From: Ruditapes philippinarum
Taxonomy: Eukaryota
Assembly (NCBI RefSeq): GCF_026571515.1
Contig: NW_026861942.1
Coordinates: 124,001 to 188,000, forward strand
Direction of reading: 5' to 3'
Length of the DNA: 64,000 bases
The stretch's first letter is position 1. Each line of letters begins with the position of its first letter. The notes beneath the pieces were generated by a model. That model saw only the letters and a list, made by a program, of their open reading frames with translations. It ran no database searches and was not told the origin of the DNA. A program made the translations under genes and the position numbers. Below are positions 29,420-60,109 of this stretch, one piece after another.

Positions 29420-29885
29420 TTTTTGTTGGGTTTTAAGTCAAAACCAACAATGTGAAGATCATATGAGCTGCGTCACGACAAAACCAACATAATGCGTTTG
29501 CGACCAGCATGGATCCAGACCAGCCTGCGCAGACTGATCAGGATCCATGCTGTTCGCTATCAGTTTCGCTATTTGTAATAGAGCTTAAAAGCGAACAGCA
29601 TGGATCCTGATCAGACTGGGCGGATTCGCAGGCTGGTCTGGATCCATGCTGGTCGCAAACGCATTACGTTGGTTTTGTCGTGACGTGGCTCATATGTAGA
29701 CACTTAAGCTTTACAGAACCTCAAGTGTCCCTCCGTGCATTATTTCAGGCACGAATTGGCATCTGAAAAGATTCCCCAACGTATCGTATGTCAGTTGGAT
29801 AGTTTCCTTACATGAAATAATCCAAGGCGATGATAGTTAAGTGGTCTGAAGTTATAGACATTAATTACTCGGTCACGGAAGTCTC
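29420..29885 (-). mobile_element. tRNA-derived SINE, RUDI/V-SINE-like, interrupted by a MITE
   Basis: Minus strand reads TCCGTGACCGAGT (A-box region)...CATGTAAGGAAACTATCCAACTG...CGTGCCTGAAATAATGCACGGAGGG...AAACCCAACAAAA, matching the recalled bivalve RUDI consensus. Uninterrupted paralog at 57240-57465. Confidence 0.7.
29465..29691. mobile_element. Palindromic MITE, Sola2-like, 4-bp TSD ATAT
   Basis: ATAT-GAGCTGCGTCACGACAAAACCAAC...GTTGGTTTTGTCGTGACGTGGCTC-ATAT with GAG...CTC ends. Single ATAT at the empty paralogous site 57277-57280. Confidence 0.85.
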
Positions 29886-31794
29886 TCACATATTGGTAGA
29901 CCTTCGACATAATGATTATTACAATAATGCACCGCAGGCCATTACTATTTAAGATACTGTTTTCTTGTTTATGTTAAATATCAAAACTTAGGTGTGATCA
30001 TCTATGATGATAAAAAATCGATTTGTCTATAATATATTTCAAGAATAAAATAAAATAATATCAAGATTTTGTGCCGAGGATACAAGAAAAAATATAAGCA
30101 GGTAGGAAGTTAAGTTGAATTTTAATATTTTTAATATCAAATCATGTCTTAAGTGAATGAAATTATTACAAAAAAATCCCGAACGAATAAAACAGCAATC
30201 AACTAGCCAAGTGTCTGTCCCAACAGTGAGCATTTCCACTACTTACACCAAGGGTCATGATTTGTTCAAGCAAACAAGTTGGCAAACAAATTAATGAATG
30301 TGTCGCCAAAGCCAAATGATATAATAAAAGTCAAACAATTGAGTTATATTAATAAATGAAAGTGATCTATTTAATAAATATTGGCATATTCTATTTCAAG
30401 ACAGAGATAAATAGAGTGCACGTAGTAATAAAATCATATCAGTGCAATTCCGTAAATACAATTTTACTAAATTGTCTGTGACTTTATTGCAAGTAAAAAA
30501 AATATAATAATTTCATTTTTACGGTTTAAACATATCACCAAACTTTGTCTTAGTATCTTCTCTATGATATTATATTCCCTCTATTGGCTAGTTCCCCCTT
30601 ACTTTAAAGTAATAAGGTACAATTTGGGTACGATTTGAAATCCGAATTGTATGTAAATAAAAATACAAAATTTCAACGCAAAAGCAATTCAAAGAATATT
30701 ATATAAGGCGTCTAAGATACTTACTAATGTTAGTGCCTACTGTGATTTATCTAGAGAATTTAACTTAGTATACGAAGAACGATACAGAATTGTCAGGCAT
30801 TATAAACAGAAAAATGATCAAGTCTTCGAATGTTCTTATACTGTATAAAATTTTTCCAAGAAATTTCTTATATTTTTCTAAGATACTCAGATCAAAACAA
30901 ATGAATATGAATAGAAGTTTTGTTGTCGAATAATCAAGTTTTCAAGTGCTATATTACTTGCGTAACATACTTTAGATTTCCATACCAAGCAAATCATGTT
31001 TGAATTCAATATAATGGAGATGAACAATTCCAGTTCTAACTGTTAAAGTTAGACAAGAGTAAGTTTTAGATTGAAACGTTGGACGGAATTTTAAAAACAA
31101 ACATACGAATGTACGTCAACTAAATGACTCCATCAATATTCAATTCATGATAGCAATTACAGTCCTCCCTATGGTGAGTGAATTAAAATCGAGAAAATAG
31201 GAAAATAAAGCATTCGAAATTAAGCAAAAGGATATCCGTTTGTAGAGTAAGTTCAGTTATAATAACAGGACTAAATTTTGTTGGCGCATGAAGCATATTG
31301 TAAAGTACGCGTTTGTCATCGGCATCAGATTTTAAATGTTTGACTTCTGTCTTACATGAATCTTGTTTTATAATTAGCAAAAGCAAGTTCCAGGCGATAT
31401 AAATGTATTGTCTCATTTGATATAAAATACAAATGCTACTTTCCTCGTTATCCATCTTATTAAATGGTTTTGAAACAAACAAAATACTCATTAACGAGTC
31501 ATAATTTGGCAGATAATCGTAATTTAGTCTGTACATGCCACTTCTTCAGAACTTGTTACCGAAAATGTGAACCATCAGTTTTCAAGTGTACCCCTTTCCT
31601 AACACCTGGAAATGAAATGTGGTTGAATTTTCATTAACAAGTTTAAAACACATAGAACGTAATAATAGAAGGAATCATAACTCAAATAGGTAGGTCGTTT
31701 TTAAATAAATGTTTTGTTTTTATCCTGCTTGTAAATACAAAATTGTTAAATAGAAAGTAATGTACTGATATTTGTTTCTTTTTTTTATTAATTT

Positions 31795-31960
31795 ATATTT
31801 TGTTCGATTTGCTTTTTCCGTTACACCAATACAATAGAAGTCTCATGACGATTCGGCAGCTATATTGGTTGAGGAAGTATCAGTCGCATAATTTCAGGCA
31901 CGATTAGGCATCTAAGAAGAACCAGTGATGTTCCTTCAGCTGGTTGGATAGCTGCTAAAC
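31795..31960 (-). mobile_element. Truncated, diverged RUDI-like SINE (paralog 59652-59815)
   Basis: Core GCATAATTTCAGGCACGA...GAACC...GTTGGATAGC is shared with 29735-29805. Confidence 0.55.
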
Positions 31961-33749
31961 ACAACAAGTATGTCTGAAAAAAAACATAAACACCTGGAAA
32001 CACTTTGATATATATCATTTCGCAAAAATAACCATTTACATTTTGAAGTTATACGACATTATAATTTCAAAAAATACTACATAAATAATTAAAACAATAC
32101 ATGTAACTCTCTTTGTAATGTCAGAGCCTTCTAATTTACATTTGCATGAGCCTTGTTAATAACATTAGAATGAGCAATTAAGTTTATTGATCATCCCTGG
32201 CCAGACATTGTCATTTTCGAAAAATAGTCCTCCCACTGTTGTCAAAAGGTAAAGAAGGGTCATTTGAATTGATCGAGTAAAATACAATTTAATTAAATTA
32301 GTTTAAACATAATTATTTCCCAAATATATACAGTTACATATAAACATATACATATACAATACAAAAACATGTTACATCCAGGAAAAGGATGAGAACAAAA
32401 GACTAAGTCTTATCAAATTCTTCTCCTTTTTATTGTGTTTCGATAATGTGGCGAGTTTTGTACTATATAAAAAGTATGACAACTGGGGAATATAGATATT
32501 TTGGAAAATAATGAAATTCAATGGTAAATAAAAGTAGAATTTAAAGTCTCCATTTAAATTCATATTCATTTTTTTTCTCCTCGACTACTTCTTACTTTCA
32601 TGAAAATGCTATGATGTAATTTTGTTGATTTTGATACGCTTAAAGTTAAATATCGTGTTTATGAAAAGTAATTTTAATTTGAATATAATTTTTTGCAAAA
32701 ATAATTTTATTGATATTTTTTGACCATGTTCTTCATTTTTTACTATACAGACGATTTTATATCAATTTATTGTTGCGTTTAAATTTTTTCTGATGCACGT
32801 GTATTAAATCTCTGAACGAATGTAGAAAAGGACATTTATTTTTTCAGCAGAATGTTTTTGAAACGTCATTTTATTATGTCTAGTATGCACTTCATTTTTA
32901 CAGCTGTCCAAATATATAAGAATTGAAGGCAATAGTGTTGCCATAAAGACAACATTACATGTAATGCTATTACGGCTTACAAGCACAATCAAACCTAGAA
33001 AATTTTACTATTTTGCCGTGTTGGGCTTTTTTAAGGGATTGTGTTTTTCTCTATAACAAAATGATAGCAGTTCAGATAATTTGGCTAATCTGGGTTGTGC
33101 AGCTTTAGAAATTAATCTATTTCCTGATCATTTATTTTAGTTGTCGATGCAAAAACAATACACGCATTTATGACATCTTTCTAAAGCAATGTTCACTGAG
33201 AGTAAGAGAGCTTTATTCTCTCGGAGAATGCGTATTTCAAACGGTTATATAACTCTTGAAAAACAAAAGAGCTATGCTTGAGAAATAACTTTCTAACTGC
33301 ACGAATGATTTACGACTTAAATTAATAAACAAAAAAAACGAAAGTTTGAGCTCGCCACATTAACCATGTTCTTTCAAAGAACAGAGAAAACTGATATAAA
33401 CGTCGAAGACTTTTTCATGTAATCAGATTTTGTTTTATCTTCTCTTTAAGCAGCATTCGCATTAGTACAACGTACCAGATGTGTCTCGAATGTCAGATAG
33501 TTTTTATCATTTTACATTCGTAACAAGAAATCAGAGATTTTCAAACTAGAGTATTGTCTTTTACGAAGTGGTGTAAATACTACAGGAAGAACGACTTAGG
33601 ATATTTTCTTTTCTAGTATATTTCTTATAAACACTTTTATGTTCAACATAATGATTTTCACCAAAATGAGTACTCGATGGAATCTCAAAAATAAAAATAA
33701 TCATGTGAAAATGACTATTAAAATAATTAAGAAAATTAGATACATAAAT

Positions 33750-33984
33750 GAGCCGCACAATGACAAAACTAGCATAATGGGGATGCGACCAGAATGGATC
33801 CAGACCAGCCTGCGCTTCCGCGCAGACTGATCAGGATCCATGCTGTTCGCTATCAGTTTCTCTACTTGTAATAGGGTTTGTAAGCGAACAGCATGAATCC
33901 TGATCAGATTGCGCGGATTTGCAGGCTGGTCTGGATCCATGCTAGCCGCAAACCAATTATGTTGGTTTTGTCATGACGCGGCTC
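33750..33984. mobile_element. Second Sola2-like MITE copy, TSD AAAT
   Basis: AAAT-GAGCCGCACAATGACAAAAC...GTTTTGTCATGACGCGGCTC-AAAT; same family as 29465-29691. Confidence 0.85.
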
Positions 33985-35717
33985 AAATATGGTTAAAATG
34001 AGGGTCACAAATGCCATTTTGAGAGAGGTTTTTTATTTACTCTTTAAGATCATGTTTAATTCCAAAAATGATTATATTAATTGGCTGTTTTGAATCTAAA
34101 CCTTTTGCAAATTCATTTTACAAATTCATCCGGTTGTAATTAAGGGTGCAACAATTTAGCTACATTTAGAAAGGTAAACCAGACAGATATTGCTGTCGAA
34201 TAGTTATAATTTCTTGAGCTTTCGTGACAAAATTTATTAAATTATACTTTCAAGGCTTCACACAATTCTAGATTCAATTCTAAAAAATTATAGAAAAAGT
34301 ACATGTATTTCCAGCATCATGTATCAGGTGCTCTTTTACTTCCGGCCATAGAAATCGGCCGGTCATTGTGACAATTTGTTATTGTACTAGAAAGCAACCA
34401 GTTTATATGATACACAAGTACCTACGCGTTTTTTGTATTCGCTTCTCATTCATCTCTAGGTAAGCTTGATAAATGGTCATTAAAATAACATTTCTAACCT
34501 CATTTATCAGGCATTCTTTTACTTCGGGCAAAAAGCTATCGGTCAATATGACAATTTGAATAATTGTAGTCAAGTTATAATTACTGCTATACATTGATTA
34601 GAAACGTAGAATCTTTTTCCGTCATCATTTATTATTAAAGTGTCACAGATATAGAACAAATTATTATAAGGATAAAATAAATGTACTGCAAATTGAAGTT
34701 GCTATTTTGATTATAATGTTTTATTCTATTTCAAATGTTTGCATAATTTTATAAACTTAAAAAGAACCAAACATGTCATTATTTCAAAACCTACTCATTA
34801 AATGATTTGATACATAGCTACCTAGGAATGATTTTATATCAAATATGCTACAATGTTATTGTAATATATTATCTAAAGGATATTAAATGAAAAACTTTCA
34901 ATTTAACACTTCATATGATAAAGTTTGATTAACTAATGAAATGCTTTATGAACCTTTGAAAAGCACATAAAAAGACGCACAACTTGAAAATCGCTGACCT
35001 TGTCCAGACATAGCTATTAACCCTCTTTCACTACTTATAATACACTTCAAAACTTTAATAAATTAGCATATTTTACTTGAAACTATATTAAAGTATTTGC
35101 TAAACATAGTTTTTTATGTATGATGCCTTAACGTATAAGATCTACATGTATGTGTGAGAGAAAAAAGTTGAAAAAATAACATTAGTTCGAAGAAGCAGGC
35201 ATTATGACGATGTCATTAAAAGGGTAGATGTAAATGTGCATAATATCCGTAATGTTACAAGTGAGTTAATGTGTTTGAAGTAACAAATATTGAATACTTT
35301 ATCAAAATAGGTATGCAAATTACATACTTTGCAATAAACATTGCATTTCTATTACCAAAATGCAGTCATTATCGATATATTATGTCATATATGCAAACAA
35401 GAGATACACTTAACAGCAAAATAAATTATCAAATCCATTTCAAATTTTAGTTGATGTTATAAACATTGTTATCAAATAAATGATAAATATAGAATACAGA
35501 GGTCATAAAACACATGGAACATATACTAAATATACAGTATCAAAATTGTGTAGCATTTTGTAAACAAACCTAACTAAATAAGTCAACGCACCATTGTTAT
35601 TTTTATGTAAATAACATGTGTTACCCAACTATGTAATCGATTACAGGAACCGATTTGCTTTGACCATGATTGATCCTAAATTGACATAATTAAATTCCTT
35701 TAGGGCGTACATTTGAC

Positions 35718-35724
35718 TATAAAA
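35718..35724 (+). promoter_or_regulatory. TATA box of the cysteine-rich protein gene; probable non-coding exon 1 ~35748-35790
   Basis: TATAAAA lies ~70 bp upstream of a consensus donor AA|GTAAGT (35791). Acceptor TTTCTTTTTCAG ends at 35917, 12 nt before the ATG. Confidence 0.65.
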
Positions 35725-35929
35725 GACATCAACAAGGCTTCACAATCAAAACAATTTTCAGTGTTCTCTCGTTGTAGCATAACAACCCAAGTAAGTTTTA
35801 CGTTTCCTATTTAATAGCAACTTATTTTGTTACAGAATAATCTGTGGAATTTCAGTATTCAACCTACGACAAGGTTTGTGACTTATTTATATATAAATTT
35901 AGGTGTTTCTTTTTCAGTCAATCTTAATC

Positions 35930-37433
35930 ATGTTCCGGTTCGAAGTTTGCCTTCTCTTGGTAGTTGCTGTTGTATACACCATGGCTAATGAATGTTCCAA
36001 GTAAGTGTTGCTTATGTTCTTTAGTCTTTTTGTATAAGTTGTAATTTAGCTTGTAAATTTCACATCTTCATTATCTCAAAATGATAAATGTGTGCAGAGT
36101 TCATAATTGTCCTCGTGTTTTTGATATTTGTGCTAATATGACGCCATTACTTGCATGTTTGTTACTTTCAATGTATCATTAAACACCTTATTTGAGGAAT
36201 AAATGTAGCGAATATAACTGATATGCCAATTTAAATGATTCCGAGTAAAAACATACTGTTGTTTACACTGACTTCAGTATGAACGTTAACATATGAACAG
36301 TTCTTTTGGATGAAAGGACATTTTTTTCTCTTTCAGCTGCACATGTGGTCAAGTATGTGACTCAACCTCTGTATGTACAGATGGTAAGTATATGTTTGTA
36401 AACTTTGTAAAGTACTATGTCTGAATAGAGTGGGATTCCTGGGTTCTTTAGATTAAATAATCTATTATAACTTAAATTTTCTTATAATTTAAAAGTAGAT
36501 ATAAATGTGGTTTCGCACAACCTGGTATGAAATGACAATGTCTTTACTCTTTTCCCTATTTTTATAAACAATCAAATTGCGTAACGTTATAATAACAGGC
36601 TGCTTAGTGTATGACAAATTCATTAAAGTTGGCGAAGAATTAGCAGTGTATGGTAATACATGCAAATGTCAGAATGAAACAGATGCAAAAGGAAGAGTCA
36701 CCGCGGTAAATATGACAAGCTTACATAATGAAAATATATACAAACGAAAGTGGTATATTTAATTGAACTCATTCATATTTAGGTTTAAACTGCATTAAGT
36801 GTTTAAATCATATTTCAATTTGTGTTTATTCAATATAACAAGAACATACAATACGTATATGTAAAAGGCAAAATAAACCAAATGAAATAAATGGGTGTAA
36901 ATTATTACAAGCGACATATATACTAAAAATCCAGAACTGTAATTCACATTATTCTAATATCCTTACTGTTATATCTGGGAATAGTTGTAACAACTCTCCG
37001 ATTACAAAGTGTCCGATATAGCGTTATGCTATTACTGAACATTACTTTTTTATATAACAACAAAATAGTTCATGGACTGTAATGAACGGCTATGGTTGAC
37101 GCCAATGTGTAGTAACATCATAACTGCCACGATCTACCAACGTTTTATCATGTAATTAAAAGTGTAATAAGAAACTGTAAATATATTGCCTGTGATAATG
37201 TATTTTGTGAGCGAGAAATGTAATCTTTATTTGCAAAACATACAGTTTAGCTCTTTTATATATAGGTTTACATATAAACATCATGAATTGAAGTAATAAC
37301 AATGTCCCTATAGTATACAGATATGTGTTTTATGTGTGAGTATTTTTCATTTCAGTGTACAAGTCTGGAGTTTGTTGGTGCACCAGCTGGTGACCCATGG
37401 ACCCTGAACCCAAACTGCAATACAAAACTTTGA
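35930..37433 (+). CDS. Small secreted cysteine-rich protein, 100 aa; join(35930..36000,36337..36383,36599..36705,37356..37433): MFRFEVCLLLVVAVVYTMANECSNCTCGQVCDSTSVCTDGCLVYDKFIKVGEELAVYGNTCKCQNETDAKGRVTACTSLEFVGAPAGDPWTLNPNCNTKL
   Basis: Three GT-AG introns (donors GTAAGT, GTAAGT, GTAAAT; acceptors TTTCAG, TAACAG, TTTCAG) with compatible phases 2,1,0 give one open frame. Hydrophobic signal peptide of ~19 aa, 10 Cys in the mature part, upstream TATA and downstream AATAAA. Exon 3 is seen in ORF 36577..36762. Confidence 0.85.
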
Positions 37434-37475
37434 TAGATAATCTACGTTGTGTTCGATTGATGTGTAATATTTGCA

Positions 37476-37481
37476 AATAAA
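37476..37481 (+). terminator. Polyadenylation signal
   Basis: AATAAA 43 nt after the stop codon, followed by a GT/T-rich tract at ~37500-37520. Confidence 0.65.
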
Positions 37482-39365
37482 TATTAATATGTTTCAAGTG
37501 CTAGTTTGTTTTTTGTTTTATATCTTTATTCTAATTGTTTGTTTCATAGGTATTTTATTTCTTGTAATGGGATTGAAAATCGCATCATATGTATAAAGAC
37601 GACGACACCTGTAAATTATACGAACATGTTACCATCGGGAATCAGGTGCCTTTTATATTAAGACCATGGTATGTTTAATGACCGTATCGTTGAATTCATT
37701 GTATAAAGGGTAGATGTTCAAACATCTTGAATAATTATAACGTTCTTATCGGAAAACTAAAAACACTTAATGCACGTAGAAAATATATATTGTATAATTT
37801 AAAATATTTGTTGGATACAGTACTGAAATTTTTTTATTCGATAATTTGAATCATGGGATAAAACCCGCCCCGCCTATAAAGTAAGCACAAATTTCTAATA
37901 AAGCGTTATCATCCTGATAGACTACAGTGTAGTAGATATAATGAGTGTCCCTGGAAATGTCACTTGTAAATAATGCATATGCTTAATTCTCCTTATAAAA
38001 ATATGTCTATGTCTAAAACATGGAAAAAGATTTTAAAGTCTTTAGGACATACGAGGGATGATAAAAAATTAAACAGGACGTTGGCTGTCAATTGAAGACT
38101 TTTTAAACTATCACTTATGATTATATATCTGAATTAATCGGAAAACTATACCATATCTTATTTGATAACACAAATAGCTTGTACGTTACAGCGATGTCAA
38201 AAAGCATGGCAACACACACCCGGCGCAGTGCATAAATTTGCTCTGACAATAGGCGCTTTATGAAACGTATATTTTACAATATGGCTAAATAAGATTTCAA
38301 AATACGCCGAAATGTCATGAGCCACATTTAACGTTGTTAGAAAAAATGAATTCATATCATTGCAATCACAATTCATAAGTGACTTGTAAAAGAAAAACTC
38401 GCGTTAAAATTATGCCGTCGGAACGTCACGAAATTCGATCAAAAAGAAATAATATTGCGTAAATAGTAAGTCGAGAAACTGTATAAGATATAAAAAGGGA
38501 CAAAGGGAAAAGGTTAAGGTAGCCACAGCACAGTTTTTGATTGAAATAAATGAATAAGAAAGGGTGATTGATAAAGTGAAAACAGAAAAATAAGGGAGAG
38601 GCAAAAAGGAGACATTTCCGAGGACATCGGTGACGTCAATCACCGAGAGAGACGTTGAAAAGTGGAAGGTAATTGCTTGCGGACATTATAAACGATGTTA
38701 GACAGTAGCTACGGGACTGTACAATCAACTCTATGTAAGAAATTTAAAATGATAAATATTTATGCAATTATTATCACACTGGCCAAAGCTTTTACAAAAA
38801 CGGTTGGTTCATCACATTTGCGATGGAGATTTCGTCGCAGAAGCGGTGGATAAAATATGGCCGTTTGCTGCTGTCGGTAAGTTTATGACTGAATTTTACT
38901 TTATGTTTTAATGTTTTACCGAACACACCGAGTGAGACTGGAGCCTACACATTTGCGTTTCCAACTTATTACACGCACACGGTGCAATTCATTGCCATTT
39001 TTGCTAACACATATGTACAGTTTGACGTGGGAACGCCACTTTTGCATATTTTAGGTTACAACACGTACAATTGTGTACAAAACGTCCCATTAATGCACCA
39101 GCATTATACCATATGTATAATACTTGCACCAAAACAACCATAATTTGGAATTTTTGAAAATTGTTATTGGCTTTTTATAAAATGACAAAAATGATAACAA
39201 CGCAGACGGCCTTGGATTCGATTGCAACGCAGTGTGGTCCCGATACCATTAATGTCTATTGTGAGGATTTAACTTGACATAACGCATGTTTCAATTGAGA
39301 AAAACCCTTTTGTTGACATCAGAGAAATGCTTTCTTTTAGTGTTTAAAACAATATGATTTTATAT

Positions 39366-41090: not shown

Positions 41091-44000
41091 TGTGAGGTTG
41101 ATGAAGGCACCCCTATAAAAAATGTTGAGCGTTCTTTGCGTTAGTTATTCTTTGCGGTAATTTGGCGCAGTCTCCGCCATGTTTTAATTAGAAAGAATAA
41201 AGGCAATGAATTAAGAACATATTCTTTTCTTTTTAGGTAAGTATTAACAAGTAAGAGAAAGAAAAAGACTTTCTTCGATAGGTTTATACATTGTATTTTT
41301 TGTTTATCGTAACTGTTATCAATGACATTGTATTGTTTAGCTTGCAAACATGTTTAAAGTTGAGAGTCATATGTTTTCGCGGAAAAACGTTTTACATACG
41401 TATTTTGATATTTATCTATATATCATCATATTTTTACTGTTTATTGTTAATACGCATTTTATATGATAACTATGAACTTTTTGTAAGTAAAATACAGTTT
41501 AATAATTGTTTAGACAATTATTTAGAATAGCATGTTTTAGTATATGCCATATTTGGAAAGAGCTCGGTAAATGAACCCAAAGGCAATTAAACGACATAAA
41601 GTCGAACATATAAAATATTGTTTTGAACATTGTTTATATGCTATTTGTCTAACCGAACATATAACAATTCATTTATTATCTTTCATCTTTTGTTAAGTAT
41701 ATACAGTTATAAGTGCCAAATAAATTGATTGTCAGTATTATCATTTGTGCCAATGATTTAGATTGTTATTGTTTTATGCATAATAGTAAATTCTCAAGTT
41801 AAGTTTCTATTGTAGCAGTTTAGTAATCATCAGTTTAATATGTTTTTATTTCAATCAGATATATAAATAATTAAGGTTGTGTCGTTAATCAGGTTATTAT
41901 TATTCATTCCAAACATTTTACATTGCAGTATTATCATAATAATGATTTATATTTTAATACTCTTTGCATGTACCCCTAGACATGAGTAAAGTTAAAACAT
42001 TGTTATTTTAGTTGTGAACAATTAGTTAAATGTTTTTATGCCACATGTTGTTATGCAACGGCAGTCTCCGCCATGTTTTAATTAGAAAGAATAAAGGCAA
42101 TGAATTAAGAACATATTCTTTTCTTTTTAGACTCCGTATCATATCTTCAATTTGACCCGGCCAACATTTGGGGGCTCGTCCGGGATTTAATAATGGCATG
42201 TTTTTGTGATGTGGTGCGGCTCAAGAGAAAAATTTTTGGCCTTGATTCTATAGAACTGACAACGTAAGAGCAATAAAGCAATTCACAAATGAAGATGAGA
42301 TGTTAAACTTTGCTGAAGAGATGGAAGAATCAATTTTAAAAGAAGAAGAAGAAGAAGATCAAATGGCTTTTCTTTTGGCTGATTTTGAACGGATGCTATT
42401 AGAATGCAAATCAGATGACAAGTCACACAAAATTTTTCCTTATTCAACAGAGAAGTACCATATGAAAACAGATCCGTCACCAGTCATATGGAGTTCAGTA
42501 AGGCAGCAAGTGTCACCTAGCTTATTGACATATGATAAATTGGGACAGCCATCTTACCAAAAAGTGGTTAATTCACTGTGTTGGTTGTCACCATTAGGAT
42601 TTTTTTTCTAAGCAATTTGATAAGAATACACAGTCACTTAAAGACATTTATTGATTATAGAAATAAGGCATGATGCTCAGGAACAAAGGGTTCGTCATTA
42701 AAGAGAACAGGTTGGCAATGGGTCAAAACTTCTATAGCCAAAAGTGTATGACTTGAACAGACTGGCCATCTTTTCATTTCATGGGGTTTTGGCGTGGTCA
42801 AACTGTTAAGTGTAATGGCGTTGGGTTTCCTGGGGAAGCGCTTAAGATAAGAATCAATAAATAATGAAGTGTCTTTGTATAAATAATTGTGATCTTAGAG
42901 GTTGAAAAGAATGTTAGTCAATAGTGTTTCATTTGAGATCTGGGGAAATATTTTAAAGCTTATGTTTGAAATAAGTAAATTTTTGAGTTATTTTTCTATT
43001 TGTTTATTTACTTGGTTTCTAGTCTTCATTTTATTATAGTTATATATTTTGTAAATTGTTTGTGAATCATTTGGGGTTTTAAGTGGTTAGTGATAACGGT
43101 TCATTTGATAGCAAATGTCGGGACGACATTTGGTTTACGGGGGGAGTGTGTGAGGTTGATGAAGGCACCCCTATAAAAAATGTTGAGCGTTCTTTGCGTT
43201 AGTTATTCTTTGCGGTAATTTGGCGCAGTCTCCGCCATGTTTTAATTAGAAAGAATAAAGGCAATGAATTAAGAACATATTCTTTTCTTTTTAGGTAAGT
43301 ATTAACAAGTAAGAGAAAGAAAAAGACTTTCTTCGATAGGTTTATACATTGTATTTTTTGTTTATCGTAACTGTTATCAATGACATTGTATTGTTTAGCT
43401 TGCAAACATGTTTAAAGTTGAGAGTCATATGTTTTCGCGGAAAAAAACGTTTTACATACGTATTTTGATATTCATCTATATATCATCATATTTTTACTGT
43501 TTATTGTTAATACGCATTTTATATGATAACTATGAACTTTTTGTAAGTAAAATACAGTTTAATAATTGTTTAGACAATTATTTAGAATAGCATGTTTTAG
43601 TATATGCCATATTTGGAAAGAGCTCGGTAAATGAACCCAAAGGCAATTAAACGACATAAAGTCGAACATATAAAATATTGTTTTGAACATTGTTTATATG
43701 CTATTTGTCTAACCGAACATATAACAATTCATTTATTATCTTTCATCTTTTGTAAGTATATACAGTTATAAGTGCCAAATAAATTGATTGTCAGTATTAT
43801 CATTTGTGCCAATGATTTAGATTGTTATTGTTTTATGCATAATAGTAAATTCTCAAGTTAAGTTTCTATTGTAGCAGTTTAGTAATCATCAGTTTAATAT
43901 GTTTTTATTTCAATCAGATATATAAATAATTTAAGGTTGTGTCGTTAAATCAGGTTATTATTATTCATTCCAAACATTTTACATTGCAGTATTATCATAA

Positions 44001-56156: not shown

Positions 56157-57239
56157 TTAATAAAATAAATTATTTGTTAGATGAACATCCTTTTGGCTTT
56201 CAAAGTTTGCCTCCTTGTAGGTTTCTCGTCCGTGTTTATTTTGTCAGTTGTAAGTTAATTGTTCATTCAATTTTAAGTAAAAATTTCATTATGTCTATCT
56301 AAAGGTCAGTGTTTTTATTTCGCCGATCTTAAATAAAGTTTTCATTCTGTCAATTGTTAGTGAAATGTTTATTTTATTTATCTTAAGTTAAGTGTTCCTT
56401 TTTCCAATCTTACTTTAAGTGTTCATTATGTCAATTAAAATGAAGGTTTACTTCTGCCAAACTTTAGTTAAGTGTTCATTTTGCCAATCTTCATTTTAAT
56501 ACTATCACTTATAAGTAAATTCCTTATTTTGACGATTTTACGTGAAATGTTTAATCTGTTATCTTAAATTTGAGATCACAACACTAATATTATTCAGGAT
56601 AGCTTTGACCTTGATAATATTTTACGCGTGCTTCCAACATCTTTTTGGGTTTAACATAAATAAAAATTAAAACACAAAATGTTAAAAGGTACAATATTAT
56701 AACACAAGCAAAGATATAGCCTGAATTTAACAAAAATAAAACATAGCTATATAATTCAGATGTATATCTCCCAACTTCTTTTAATGCAATACAAAAAAAA
56801 TGAAAATGAAATTTACATTTTAATTGGTATTCTTGAGCATTCATCACTACACCCTTGTGTCTAGAAACGTGTATAACATTTTGCGTAATTTCCTCAAACA
56901 ATTTCTCCCTGTAAAAGTTCGTTGAGTTTTTTTTGTTTGTTAGTTTTTTATACCGTGGAGAATAAAATATTATATTCGCATAATGATATGAACGAAAAAG
57001 GAGTGACATTTCCAAATTCCTATTTAAGTACAAGCATGATAATAAATAAGAATGCACTAGTCAGTTTATATTTCTGTATTTCCCTTCGACTGTTTACTTT
57101 TGCTTTTTGTGCTTTATGGTGACTGTCATTAGGAGAAAATAACTCATGCAATATATTTCGTTGTTGTTTCAATTGTCCGAGAAGATGATATCATATCATC
57201 ATTTACCTTGACACATTTGTATATGTATAATTATTTTAT

Positions 57240-57465
57240 TCATTGGGCTTTACGTCTCACCAACAATGTCAAGTTCATATGCAGACATTAAAGGTTTACA
57301 GAACATCAGGTAGCCCTCCGTGCATTATTTCAGGCACGAATGTGCACCTGAGTAGAATCACCGGTTTCGTTTGCTAGCTGGATAGTTTCCTTACATAAAA
57401 CAATCCAAAGCAATGAGGGACAAGTGGTTTGAAGTCAAAGATCTTAATCACTAGGCCACAAAAGT
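57240..57465 (-). mobile_element. RUDI-like SINE (paralog of 29420-29885, without the MITE)
   Basis: CCCTCCGTGCATTATTTCAGGCACGAA...GCTGGATAGTTTCCTTACAT...GAAGTCAAAGATCTTAATCACTAGGCCAC. Confidence 0.7.
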
Positions 57466-59116
57466 CATTCACATAGTCATTGGTAGACCTTCGACATATA
57501 CAGATAATGCATCACACCACAGGCCATTTCTATAAAATTATACCCTTTTCTTGTTTAAAATACATCAACGCCTAAGATATAATCAATCTATGAAGATAAA
57601 AGTATAAAATTGTTCGATCGATTAATTCTATAATATTTATCAAGATTGATGTAAAATAAAGATTTTGTGCCAAGGACTCTGACAAAATATAAGCGAGATG
57701 GAAATAATTTTGTAATTTAATCTTTTTGAAATCAAATCATGTCTAAAGTGAATAAAAATATTCCAAATAATCCTGAACGTATATATCAATTAGCCATGTG
57801 TCTGTCCCAACAGTGAGCATTTTCACTACTTTCACTAAGGGTCAAGATTTGTTTGAGCAAACAAGTTTGCGCTGGAAATAAATGAATGTGTTGCCAAAGC
57901 CAAATGACATAATAAAAGTCAAAAAATTGTGTTATATTAATAAATGATAAAGATCTAGTATGTTATAAATATCGGCAAACTTCTATTTTAAGACATAGAT
58001 AAATAGAGTGGACAAAGTCATAAAATCGTATTGGTGCAATGCCGTAAACACAATGTTACTAAATTGTTTGTGGCTTTATTGCAATTTTCCTTCCATCTTC
58101 AGTAAAATCTATAGAATAATTTCCTTTTTACGGTAAATATATCACCATATTCTGTCTGAATATCATCTCGAGGATATTATATTCCCTTTAGTGGCTTATT
58201 CGCCTTCACTTTAAAGCAATTAATTACAAAAATGAGTACAATTTGAAATCCAAATCATATGTGAAATAAAAATACAAGAGTTCCTTGCTAAAGCAATTCA
58301 AATAATATTCTGTAAAGCATCTGATATACTTACCAATGTTAGTTCCTAGTATGATTCATTTAGAAAATTGTATTTAGGAAGAATGCATACATATTCCAAT
58401 ATATGAATAGGTAAAATTTATTGTTCTATCGTAACATTTGCTGTTTTATCATCACGTATTATAAACGGAAAAATTACCAAGTCCACACATGTTCTTATAA
58501 ATATTTTTTCCAAGAGATTTCTTATATTTTTCTAAGATATTCAGATCAAAACTAATGAATATGAATAGAGCAAAGATTTTGGTCATATAAGTTTTGTTGT
58601 CGAAAAAATTAAGTTTGCTTTATTATAACCTACTTTTAACTTCCACACCCAGATCAACAAGTTTTTAAATTCAACAGAATGAAGATGAACAATTTCAGTT
58701 CAAGCTTTAAAATTACACAATAGTAAGTTCTAGATTGAATAGTTGGACTGAAGTTTTAAAACAAAGCGTACGAATGTACGACAACTAAATGACTCCATCA
58801 ATATTCAATTCATAATAGCAATTACAGTCCTCCCTATGGCGAGTGAATTAAAATCGAGAAAATAGGAAAATAAAGCATTCGAAATTAAGCAAAAGGATAT
58901 CCGTTTGTAGAGAAAGTTAAGTTATAATAACAGGACTGAATTTTGTTGGCGCATGAAGCATAATATAAAGTACGCGTTTGTCATCAGATTTTAAGTGTAT
59001 GAATTCTGTCTTATATGGATCTTGTTTTCTGTTTTTATATAAGAAAACAGGATTAAATAATATAATGTCGTCGGTTAAAAAAGTTAAAGCAAAGTCAAAG
59101 CGATATTAATGTATTG

Positions 59117-59260
59117 ATAGATCCCTACTCTGACCTTTCATTTGAATAACAATAGATTTAACCACAAACATTGACATCTTTTGTTAAGAAATATGTGGTG
59201 GTGAAATTCTTGTTGCATCCACTTATCTGATAATTAGAATTGGACAGGTCAGGGATCTAT
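59117..59260. mobile_element. 144-bp MITE
   Basis: TIRs ATAGATCCCT...AGGGATCTAT with flanks GTATTG / GCATTG. The paralog at ~31405 has a single GTATTG and no insert. Confidence 0.7.
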
Positions 59261-60109
59261 GCATTGTATTATTTGATATAAAATACACATGCTACTTTCC
59301 TCGTTAACATCTATCTGATCAAATGATTTTAATACAAACAAAATACATATATAAGTGGAATAATATGGCAGATAATTGTTGTTTAGCCTGCACATTATAC
59401 CAGTGTGAAAATCCACTTCAAAATATGTTTCCGTTTTGTTTTAAAATATTTGATTGATACGTGAGTGGTTTATCAACTTTTAAGTGCCTCCCAACAAACC
59501 CAACTCCTAGACAGGAATTATCATCAACACGTTTAAAACACATACATATCATAGATGGTAAGCGTGCAGGTCTTAAATGTTTTTTTTTAGATAAAAGCGT
59601 TTGTATGCTTTTAAATACGAAATTGTGTTATAGATATGAAATACGGTTAATTTTTGTTGGGCTTTGTTTTCGTCACATCATCACAAAAAGGTGTCATGGC
59701 GACCTCTCAGCTAGACTAGTAGAATATGCGTTATATGCATTAGTTCAGGCACGAGCAGGTACCTGCGTAGAACCACTGATGTTCCTTCAGCTTGTTGGAT
59801 AGCTGCTTAACACGACAAAAGGTCCGTCTAAAGAAAAAACATGAACACTTAGAAACACTTTGATCTATATTATCACGAAAAAATAATCATTTAGATTTAA
59901 TACAGTCATATGAAGAATATATATTTTTAAACAAAGGATATAAAATTGTGGTACACTTAATTTTATTCTTTTAATATGTTTGCACATATATTTGTCAGTA
60001 TGTAGCAACATCTCAACATGGTTTATATATCCAGATATTGATTTTTTTAAACACGATCATGCGTTCAGTCAACTTGGATTTGTTTTGAAGATAAACGACT
60101 TTATAATTT

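What the first reader, a model, noticed from the sequence alone, without database searches (positions are those of the whole stretch)
35718..37481. Hidden spliced gene for a small secreted protein with an unusual 10-cysteine scaffold
Seen in sequence: a complete gene model (TATA, UTR exon, 4 coding exons, AATAAA) giving a signal peptide plus an 81-aa mature peptide with C-x2-C-x-C-x3-C-x5-C-x3-C-x19-C-x-C-x12-C-x19-C and two N-glycosylation sequons (NCT, NET). Inference: the N-terminal half (CSNCTCGQVCDSTSVCTDGC) resembles a truncated laminin-type EGF/MEGF repeat. The C-terminal half (GC..YDKFIKVGE....GNTCKC...G..TACT) resembles a VWC/pacifastin module lacking the Cys of the CNTCxC motif. I do not recognise this spacing from known bivalve defensin, mytilin, myticin or macin families. 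It may be an undescribed lineage-specific family of immune effector, protease inhibitor or shell/secretory protein.
Basis: partly seen in the sequence, partly recalled or inferred. Interest (0 to 1): 0.8.

Follow-up and report, generated by a model that had tools for sequence, protein, structure and literature searches.

The report
Clam secreted ten-cysteine protein gene
This is a real, spliced Manila clam gene for a small secreted protein held by ten cysteines; it is already in the public annotation as "uncharacterized" and belongs to an unstudied family seen so far only in clams and their close bivalve relatives.

Summary
The coding model is right. Four coding exons (35918-36000, 36337-36383, 36599-36705, 37356-37433) give a 100-aa protein with the stated ten-cysteine spacing. 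All three coding junctions appear in spliced contigs of run X1.

The product equals RefSeq XP_060556885.1, [quoted passage not shown], letter for letter. So the gene is not hidden.

The X1 contig joins exon 2 to a distal exon ending at 30101, 5.8 kb upstream. They are conserved among paralogues, so they may be an alternative promoter.

The gene is one of at least 12 copies in this genome. All named relatives are imparidentian bivalves and all are uncharacterised.

No Pfam or PDB sequence match was found. Two AlphaFold models give only weak, consistent hits to fibronectin type I, VWC and pacifastin modules.

The mature protein is acidic and under purifying selection. That argues against a classical antimicrobial peptide. 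The function is untested.

The scan's earlier notes hold nothing on this family.

The parts
29946..29952 (+). TATA-like box (TATTTAA) about 45 nt before the first contig-supported base of the distal 5' exon; possible distal promoter
   Evidence: Read. The neighbour paralogue's copy has TATAAAA at the aligned place. Its function is inferred only.
29995..30101 (+). Distal non-coding 5' exon used in run X1
   Evidence: The X1 contig runs 104 loose letters 5' of 35915. The 30 letters shown match 30069-30098 with 0 mismatches, against 0 expected by chance. GT follows at 30102. The 5' limit 29995 is set by length only. It holds a 14-codon uORF at 30004-30048.
30102..35917 (+). Intron 1 of the X1 transcript form (5.8 kb, GT..AG)
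35718..35725 (+).
   Evidence: It is identical in L002 and L003 within a 35-nt fully conserved block. A TATA-like box lies 202-238 nt before the ATG in 6 of 6 copies (five on contig C10429 plus L003 on C13495). X1 has no depth here.
35745..35790 (+).
   Evidence: X1 depth is zero in bin 35708-35858, and the contig enters exon 2 from the distal exon. The stretch is 86-90% alike in L002, more than introns 2-4 at 71-86%. It may be an alternative first exon.
35918..36000 (+). Exon 2: 12 nt of 5' UTR, ATG at 35930, signal peptide and first mature residues; ends in phase 2
   Evidence: Joint 36000>36337 appears in an X1 contig at depth 13.9.
36337..36383 (+). Exon 3: four cysteines of the N-terminal cap; ends in phase 1
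   Evidence: Joints 36000>36337 and 36382>36598 (cut +1) appear in X1.
36599..36705 (+). Exon 4: core hairpin with the C-x19-C-x-C stretch; the best conserved exon of the family
   Evidence: There are 12 matching loci in the own genome. Joint 36704>37355 (cut +1) appears in 2 X1 contigs. A 9-letter overhang equals the start of exon 5.
37356..37481 (+). Exon 5: last two cysteines, stop TGA at 37431-37433, 3' UTR up to AATAAA at 37476-37481
   Evidence: The listed X1 contigs cover 37355-37423. The poly(A) site itself is not verified.

Best explanation
Shown. This is a transcribed, spliced Manila clam gene, RefSeq LOC132717432, spanning about 29995-37481 on the + strand. It encodes a 100-aa precursor: an N-terminal hydrophobic leader and an 81-aa acidic mature protein with ten cysteines. 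Those ten cysteines are kept in every one of 12 aligned family members but one, which lacks the first. It is one of at least 12 copies in this genome. Five copies sit in an 87-kb cluster. The family is found so far only in imparidentian bivalves.

Inferred. The protein is secreted and locked by five disulfides. Its core (residues about 37-80) forms a fibronectin-type-I / VWC-subdomain-1-like beta finger. A small four-to-five-cysteine cap sits in front, and a Gly/Pro-rich tail is pinned back by the last cysteine.

Most likely it works as a stable extracellular binding module. It would bind a protein or matrix partner, as single-domain VWC and FnI-type fingers do. It would not act as an enzyme or a membrane-active peptide. 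Its partner and tissue are unknown.
For: - Gene and splicing: (three GT..AG joints in X1 contigs; no depth over introns).
- None of the 12 genomic copies is intronless, so the spliced contigs come from RNA.
- Identity with XP_060556885.1.
- Family: 12 exon-4-type loci in the genome. The four-coding-exon layout is kept in L001-L006.
- Of the 12 proteins returned, 10 carry names, and all 10 are 'uncharacterized' or 'hypothetical': Ruditapes 2, Dreissena 4, Mya 2, Mercenaria 1, Mactra 1. All five genera are Imparidentia (Mercenaria is placed from recall).
- Nine cysteines are invariant and the first is kept in 11 of 12. The invariant columns also include G28, G40, D45, F47, G51, Y57, G83 and P85.
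- Constraint: dN/dS of the mature part is 0.22, 0.16, 0.10 and 0.08 against L002-L005, with introns 71-86% alike.
- Fold: model 2 has pLDDT 84-92 over residues 31-100 and is all-beta.
- Foldseek lists the same kinds of module for both models.
- Acidic, not cationic: pI 4.0-4.8 in 9 of 12 members.
Against: - Four rows in each VIA list are unrelated fungal MAX effectors.
- Pfam finds no FnI, VWC, SVWC, pacifastin, TIL or EGF match at E<=10 in 0 of 12 members.
- Model 1 of this very protein is only moderately confident (mean pLDDT 70).
- Disulfide pairing was not read from the models.
- Secretion rests on a crude hydropathy reading.
- Expression was seen in one laid run only (X1, whose RNA nature is the tool's guess). 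It was absent from three other RNA runs.
- Nothing here tests binding.
Confidence: 0.55

Rival explanations
1. Structural or regulatory component of an extracellular matrix (shell, periostracum, ligament or mucus). An acidic, disulfide-rich protein deposited in or acting on a mineralising or adhesive matrix.
For: - Mature proteins are strongly acidic in 9 of 12 members, with net charge -4 to -21.
- Several members carry Asp/Glu- or Thr/Ala/Pro-rich tails (P0007, P0016-P0019).
- The family is restricted to one bivalve clade.
- It is multi-copy.
- Expression is restricted to some samples.
Against: - No tissue information is available.
- This copy has no acidic tail.
- No known shell-matrix domain was found.
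- Three Dreissena members are basic.
- No paper or visible proteome names these genes. Supplements were closed.
Confidence: 0.15
2. Canonical tight-binding serine protease inhibitor of the pacifastin/TIL kind.
For: - Pacifastin inhibitors appear among the weak Foldseek rows for both models (E 0.77-2.4, TM by target 0.51-0.63).
- Pacifastin clusters appear in the atlas search at 0.77-0.81.
- The protein is small, rigid and disulfide-rich.
Against: - The hits are not significant, and short targets inflate the TM score.
- No Pacifastin_I or TIL Pfam match at E<=10 in 0 of 12 members.
- Ten cysteines with a different spacing.
- No conserved exposed reactive-site loop could be named from the alignment.
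Confidence: 0.12
3. Antimicrobial or other immune effector, or a cytokine-like immune signal comparable to arthropod single-VWC (Vago) proteins.
For: - Small secreted cysteine-rich protein in a tandem, multi-copy family.
- Expression differs between samples.
- SVWC proteins are small secreted one-domain proteins with immune roles (PMC13115929, passages read).
Against: - The protein is anionic.
- Selection between paralogues is purifying, not diversifying.
- SVWC is defined by eight conserved cysteines, whereas this family has ten.
- No VWC-type Pfam match.
- No infection data were available.
Confidence: 0.13
4. A chance open reading pattern or a dead gene copy without function.
For: Three raw RNA runs showed no reads on exons 3 and 5, and only sub-1x two-stranded background over exons 2 and 4. 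One cluster copy (L004) has lost the aligned start and the last cysteine.
Against: - Spliced contigs carry all three coding joints.
- The RefSeq model is identical.
- Orthologues in five genera keep the cysteines.
- dN/dS is 0.08-0.22.
Confidence: 0.02

Closest known systems
Fibronectin type I (finger) modules (e.g. PDB 2cg6, 3ejh, 1tpn, 4bdx)
VWC domains and arthropod single-VWC (SVWC/Vago) proteins
   Same: The architecture is alike: a small secreted protein made of one disulfide-rich domain. VWF C4/C6, NELL2, CCN3 and mucin VWC-type modules appear among the weak fold hits. A mollusc VWC2L-like cluster is an atlas lead at 0.83 and 0.75.
   Different: SVWC has eight conserved cysteines in four disulfides (PMC13115929, passages), whereas this family has ten. 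The C-x2-C-x-C and C-C-x2-C motifs of VWC (recalled) are absent. No VWC-type Pfam match at E<=10 in 0 of 12 members.
Pacifastin protease inhibitors
   Same: Both have a small three-stranded disulfide-locked fold. Weak Foldseek rows appear for both models.
   Different: Pacifastin has a six-cysteine, roughly 35-residue domain (recalled). This family has ten cysteines in about 75 residues. There is no Pfam match.
Unnamed cysteine-rich repeats of Polyangiaceae-type bacterial proteins (P0009 = MCL2823490.1; P0012, P0013, P0025 from metagenomes)
   Same: The units are about 38 residues long with near-identical spacing (C-x4-C-x5-C-x3-C-x17/19-C-x1/2-C) and shared G-x-V-C, G-C and hairpin Gly positions. 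hhalign of the bivalve profile against 25 units gives probability 94.4, score 36.1 over 26 columns. None of 200 column shuffles reached that score (highest 19.2). phmmer E-values are 5e-8, 3.8e-4 and 6e-4.
   Different: These are bacterial, tandemly repeated units inside long proteins. They lack the C-terminal third of the bivalve domain. The whole-protein E-value is inflated by 10 near-identical repeats. hhalign against the single protein P0013 gave only probability 7.5. Convergence of short cysteine frameworks cannot be excluded. The repeats themselves have no Pfam or NCBIfam name.

Membership tests
Unnamed imparidentian-bivalve ten-cysteine secreted protein family (RefSeq 'uncharacterized' LOC132717432/33, LOC132713567, LOC127870349, LOC128235463, LOC123553515 and others) | N-terminal hydrophobic leader; ten aligned cysteines; G-x-V-C, G-C-x-[VL]-[YF]-D-x-F, V-Y-G and G-x-P motifs; about 100-140 aa | tested here: met
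   The alignment of 12 members shows the invariant columns, and the window's product is row 1. Profile E-values are 1e-25 to 1e-41 among full-length members. The four-coding-exon layout is shared by L001-L006.
[quoted passage not shown] | Match to a Pfam VWC-type profile | tested here: not met
   hmmscan at E<=10 gave 0 families for P0003 and P0002. No VWC-type family was hit in 0 of 12 members.
[quoted passage not shown] | C-x2-C-x-C and C-C-x2-C cysteine motifs (recalled definition) | tested here: not met
   The family has G/x-N-T-C-x-C, with no cysteine at the first position, and no adjacent Cys-Cys pair in the 12-member alignment.
[quoted passage not shown] | Fold: FnI-like subdomain 1 plus subdomain 2 | tested here: inconclusive
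Arthropod single-VWC (SVWC/Vago) family | Eight conserved cysteines forming four disulfides (PMC13115929, passages) | tested here: not met
   There are ten aligned cysteines, nine invariant and one in 11 of 12 members. The definition was read.
Fibronectin type I module | Pfam fn1 profile match | tested here: not met
   No fn1 hit at E<=10 in 0 of 12 members.
Fibronectin type I module | Finger fold with a four-cysteine C...C-x-C...C framework (recalled) | tested here: inconclusive
Pacifastin inhibitor | Pfam Pacifastin_I match; six-cysteine domain of about 35 residues (recalled) | tested here: not met
   No Pfam hit. The family has ten cysteines. Only weak fold rows appear, at E 0.77-2.4.
   No EGF-type family at E<=10 in 0 of 12 members. 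No EGF entry appears among the fold rows except the FnI part of an FnI-EGF pair.
Known bivalve antimicrobial peptide families (defensin, big defensin, mytilin, myticin, macin) | Family profile match; cationic mature peptide (recalled general feature) | tested here: not met
   No Pfam family was hit. The mature protein has D+E 10 against K+R 6 and pI about 4.5.

The most novel reading that the evidence does not exclude
The ten-cysteine scaffold is a domain family not yet defined anywhere. Its N-terminal and central 38-residue unit would be truly homologous to the unnamed cysteine repeats of Polyangiaceae-type bacteria. On that reading, imparidentian bivalves either captured a bacterial module or kept a deep, unrecognised branch of the FnI/VWC finger superfamily. 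They then expanded it into a family of stand-alone secreted binding proteins, playing a role like that of arthropod single-VWC proteins.
Probability: 0.15. Interest if true: 0.6.

Novelty: new variant of a known kind. Interest (0 to 1): 0.35.

Why it matters
Bivalve genomes hold many lineage-restricted secreted cysteine-rich families, and most have no assigned role. This one is well defined:
- ten conserved cysteines;
- a conserved exon layout;
- at least 12 copies in the Manila clam;
- orthologues in five imparidentian genera;
- clear purifying selection.

It has no Pfam model, no solved relative and no paper that I could find. Defining it as a domain family would improve the annotation of commercially important clams and of the invasive zebra mussel. 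Its expression is sample-restricted, so it is a tractable candidate for tissue- or condition-specific biology. The likeness to a myxobacterial repeat, if real, would be a small evolutionary surprise.

It is not a hidden gene, and nothing here points to an unusual mechanism.

Tried and rejected
- It used exon limits that were off by one or two bases and gave nonsense translations. Searches corrected them.
- **Paralogue in the window.** None was found for the coding exons. In tblastn of the four exon peptides, the next best hit after self had E >= 0.21.
- **DUF5907 fibre repeats (P0005, P0006, P0010, P0014).** Whole-protein E-values reached 3.8e-19, but these rest on 4-11 near-identical units scoring 15-19 bits each. 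Profile comparison gave probability 2.0 and score 15.6, reached by 1 of 100 column shuffles. I reject this as a repeat-inflated chance match.
- **Sequence searches.**
  - PDB: no hit at E<=10 with the protein.
  - PDB with the family profile: two irrelevant rows at E 0.3 and 0.87.
  - NCBIfam: nothing for P0003.
- **Atlas searches.** All scores were 0.75-0.84, a range the tool says shuffled proteins often reach. I used them as leads only.
- **Shared leader exon, as in another family of this genome.** Only 4 loci match exon 2, so the answer is no.
- **Papers.**
  - No paper holds the ten LOC, XP or DPMN identifiers tried.
  - No paper holds the four peptide motifs tried.
  - The listing (20 of 88 shown; titles and abstract starts only) names nothing like this family.
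  - Supplementary tables were closed and may list these genes in transcriptome or proteome studies.
  - Tissue of expression could not be determined, because run and sample names are coded and read laying is capped at one call.
Full report
**What is in the sequence**

On the + strand an ATG at 35930 opens a reading frame carried by four exons:
- 35918-36000
- 36337-36383
- 36599-36705
- 37356-37433

The stop is TGA at 37431-37433. Every intron begins GT and ends AG behind a pyrimidine tract. The phases fit, with split codons AA|C (Asn) and G|GC (Gly).

**Is it transcribed and spliced as predicted?**

I laid window 34500-39000 against four runs.

Run X1 consists of Logan contigs from a 2015 study, and the tool marks it "RNA?".
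- It has contigs only over exons 2-5, plus one downstream repeat (7 of 30 bins).
- Depth over the introns is zero.
- It shows joints 36000>36337, 36382>36598 (cut +1) and 36704>37355 (cut +1), all GT..AG.
- Two contigs ending at 36705 carry a 9-letter overhang equal to the start of exon 5.

All 12 genomic copies have introns between these exons. The spliced contigs must therefore come from RNA.

The three raw RNA runs from other studies (X11, X13, X17; 1.1-1.9 thousand million letters read each) gave no reads on exons 3 and 5. X11 gave only sub-1x, two-stranded background over exons 2 and 4. Expression is therefore restricted to some tissues or conditions that I could not name.

**The 5' end**

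It continues for 104 letters that lie nowhere in 34500-39000. The 30 letters printed match window 30069-30098 exactly, with none expected by chance. That stretch is followed by CAG and a GT donor at 30102.

So the transcript seen starts with a distal non-coding exon (about 29995-30101) and has a 5.8-kb first intron.

- The 35 nt around TATAAAAG are identical in the two closest paralogues.
- The stretch 35534-35876 is 82-96% alike in L002, against 71-86% for introns 2-4.
- A TATA-like box lies 202-238 nt before the ATG in 6 of 6 copies, five of them on contig C10429 and L003 on C13495.

By contrast, the distal exon's copy beside the neighbouring paralogue (window 57383-57888) is only 74% alike and has lost the donor GT.

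My reading is that there are two promoters, or a conserved regulatory block. Only the distal form is shown by RNA.

**Already annotated**

I searched with the unspliced 61-aa window ORF that contains exon 4 and found P0002. Its 90% cluster holds P0003 = XP_060556885.1, [quoted passage not shown].

P0003 equals the four exon translations in order, with N and G at the split codons. P0002 (LOC132717433) is the neighbouring paralogue L002, 32 kb downstream.

The organism is therefore the Manila clam, and the gene is a public model without a function.

**The family**

In this genome:
- Exon 4 has 12 matches.
- A family profile finds the same 12, plus a fragment with a stop.
- Five copies lie within 87 kb of contig C10429. 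The others are on C13495, C953, C1989 (2) and C2076 (3).
- L001-L006 keep the four-coding-exon layout.

Elsewhere:
- An exhaustive phmmer run over 1.84 thousand million representatives gave 14 proteins at E<=0.001.
- A profile search gave 12 proteins. Of these, 10 carry names: Ruditapes 2, Dreissena 4, Mya 2, Mercenaria 1, Mactra 1. All are "uncharacterized" or "hypothetical".
- All these genera are Imparidentia.

In the 12-member alignment, nine cysteines are invariant and the first is kept in 11 of 12. G28, G40, D45, F47, G51, Y57, G83 and P85 are also invariant. The two sequons are not conserved.

**Constraint and chemistry**

Codon comparison by exon, with counts summed and the signal part left out, gives these dN/dS values:

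| Compared with | dN/dS |
|---|---|
| L002 | 0.22 |
| L003 | 0.16 |
| L004 | 0.10 |
| L005 | 0.08 |

An earlier run limited to BLAST segments dropped three changed residues and gave 0.11 for L002. dS is saturated for L004 and L005.

The mature protein has D+E 10 against K+R 6 and a pI of about 4.5. The script cut the leader six uncharged residues too early, which does not change the charge. Nine of 12 members are acidic and three Dreissena members are basic.

**What does it resemble?**

Sequence searches found nothing.
- Pfam gives no family for the protein at E<=10.
- No family is shared by more than 2 of 12 members.
- PDB sequences give nothing.

Two AlphaFold models were made.
- P0003: mean pLDDT 70.
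- Paralogue P0016: mean pLDDT 75, and 84-92 over residues 31-100.
- Both are all-beta.

Fold searches gave only weak hits.
- Foldseek finds nothing at E<=0.001. The best rows (E 0.077 and 0.084) are the TIL/E and VWC-type modules of mucins and VWF, followed by pacifastins, FnI and CCN3 VWC.
- VWC-type modules fill 5 and 6 rows, and fungal MAX effectors fill 4 each.

The core spacing C-x19-C-x-C-x12-C fits the FnI framework as I recall it.

I therefore read the core as an FnI/VWC-subdomain-1-like finger. This is a lead, not a membership. The defining features of VWC, SVWC (eight cysteines; PMC13115929, passages), pacifastin and EGF were tested and not met.

**Bacterial look-alikes**

Two kinds of bacterial protein appeared.

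The DUF5907 fibre proteins are repeat-inflated chance matches.

The cysteine repeats of a Polyangiaceae MAG protein and three metagenome proteins are different.
- Their 38-residue units share the spacing and several non-cysteine positions.
- They score 36.1 in hhalign (probability 94.4) against the bivalve profile.
- None of 200 column shuffles exceeded 19.2.

The alignment covers only 26 columns. A comparison with the single protein P0013 gave probability 7.5. Homology is therefore possible but unproven.

**Verdict**

The gene model is real and its coding part is exact.

The protein belongs to an uncharacterised, clade-restricted, multi-copy family of secreted ten-cysteine proteins with a probable finger-type core. 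It is most plausibly an extracellular binding module. An antimicrobial role is the least favoured of the functional readings.

It is already annotated, so the value lies in defining the family, not in finding the gene.

Supplements of papers were closed and may hold expression or proteome tables that bear on its function.

Noticed in passing
window 56966-59898 (core 57383-57888): A diverged copy (74-81% alike) of the promoter, distal 5' exon and start of intron 1 of this gene. It belongs to the neighbouring paralogue LOC132717433, whose coding exons lie beyond the window's end. The donor GT of the distal exon is not kept there.
   Followed up: partly
window 29460-29696 and 33741-33991: A palindromic element of about 237 bp (83% alike to its own reverse complement) lies just upstream of the distal promoter. 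A second copy (85% alike) sits inside intron 1. It looks MITE-like.
   Followed up: no
It is 96% alike in L002 and L003 and may be an extra 5' UTR mini-exon or a regulatory element. X1 has no depth there.
   Followed up: partly
window 37822-38576 and 38728-39000: RNA reads of run X11 fall on both strands, and most fit only in part (319 of 351 laid reads are partial). Many variant letters and loose ends appear. This is a transcribed repeat family downstream of the gene, not part of it.
   Followed up: no
L004 (G000:C10429:223793-226897, - strand): This cluster copy lacks a Met at the aligned start. It also has Ser in place of the last cysteine, just before the stop. It is possibly a pseudogene or a nine-cysteine variant.
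   Followed up: no
window 30004-30048: A 14-codon upstream open reading frame, beginning with two ATGs, lies in the distal 5' exon.
   Followed up: no
window 41091-42166: An earlier first-stage note (s1-804194) describes an LTR with a 70-bp internal direct repeat here. It lies 3.6 kb downstream of this gene, and I did not examine it.
   Followed up: no
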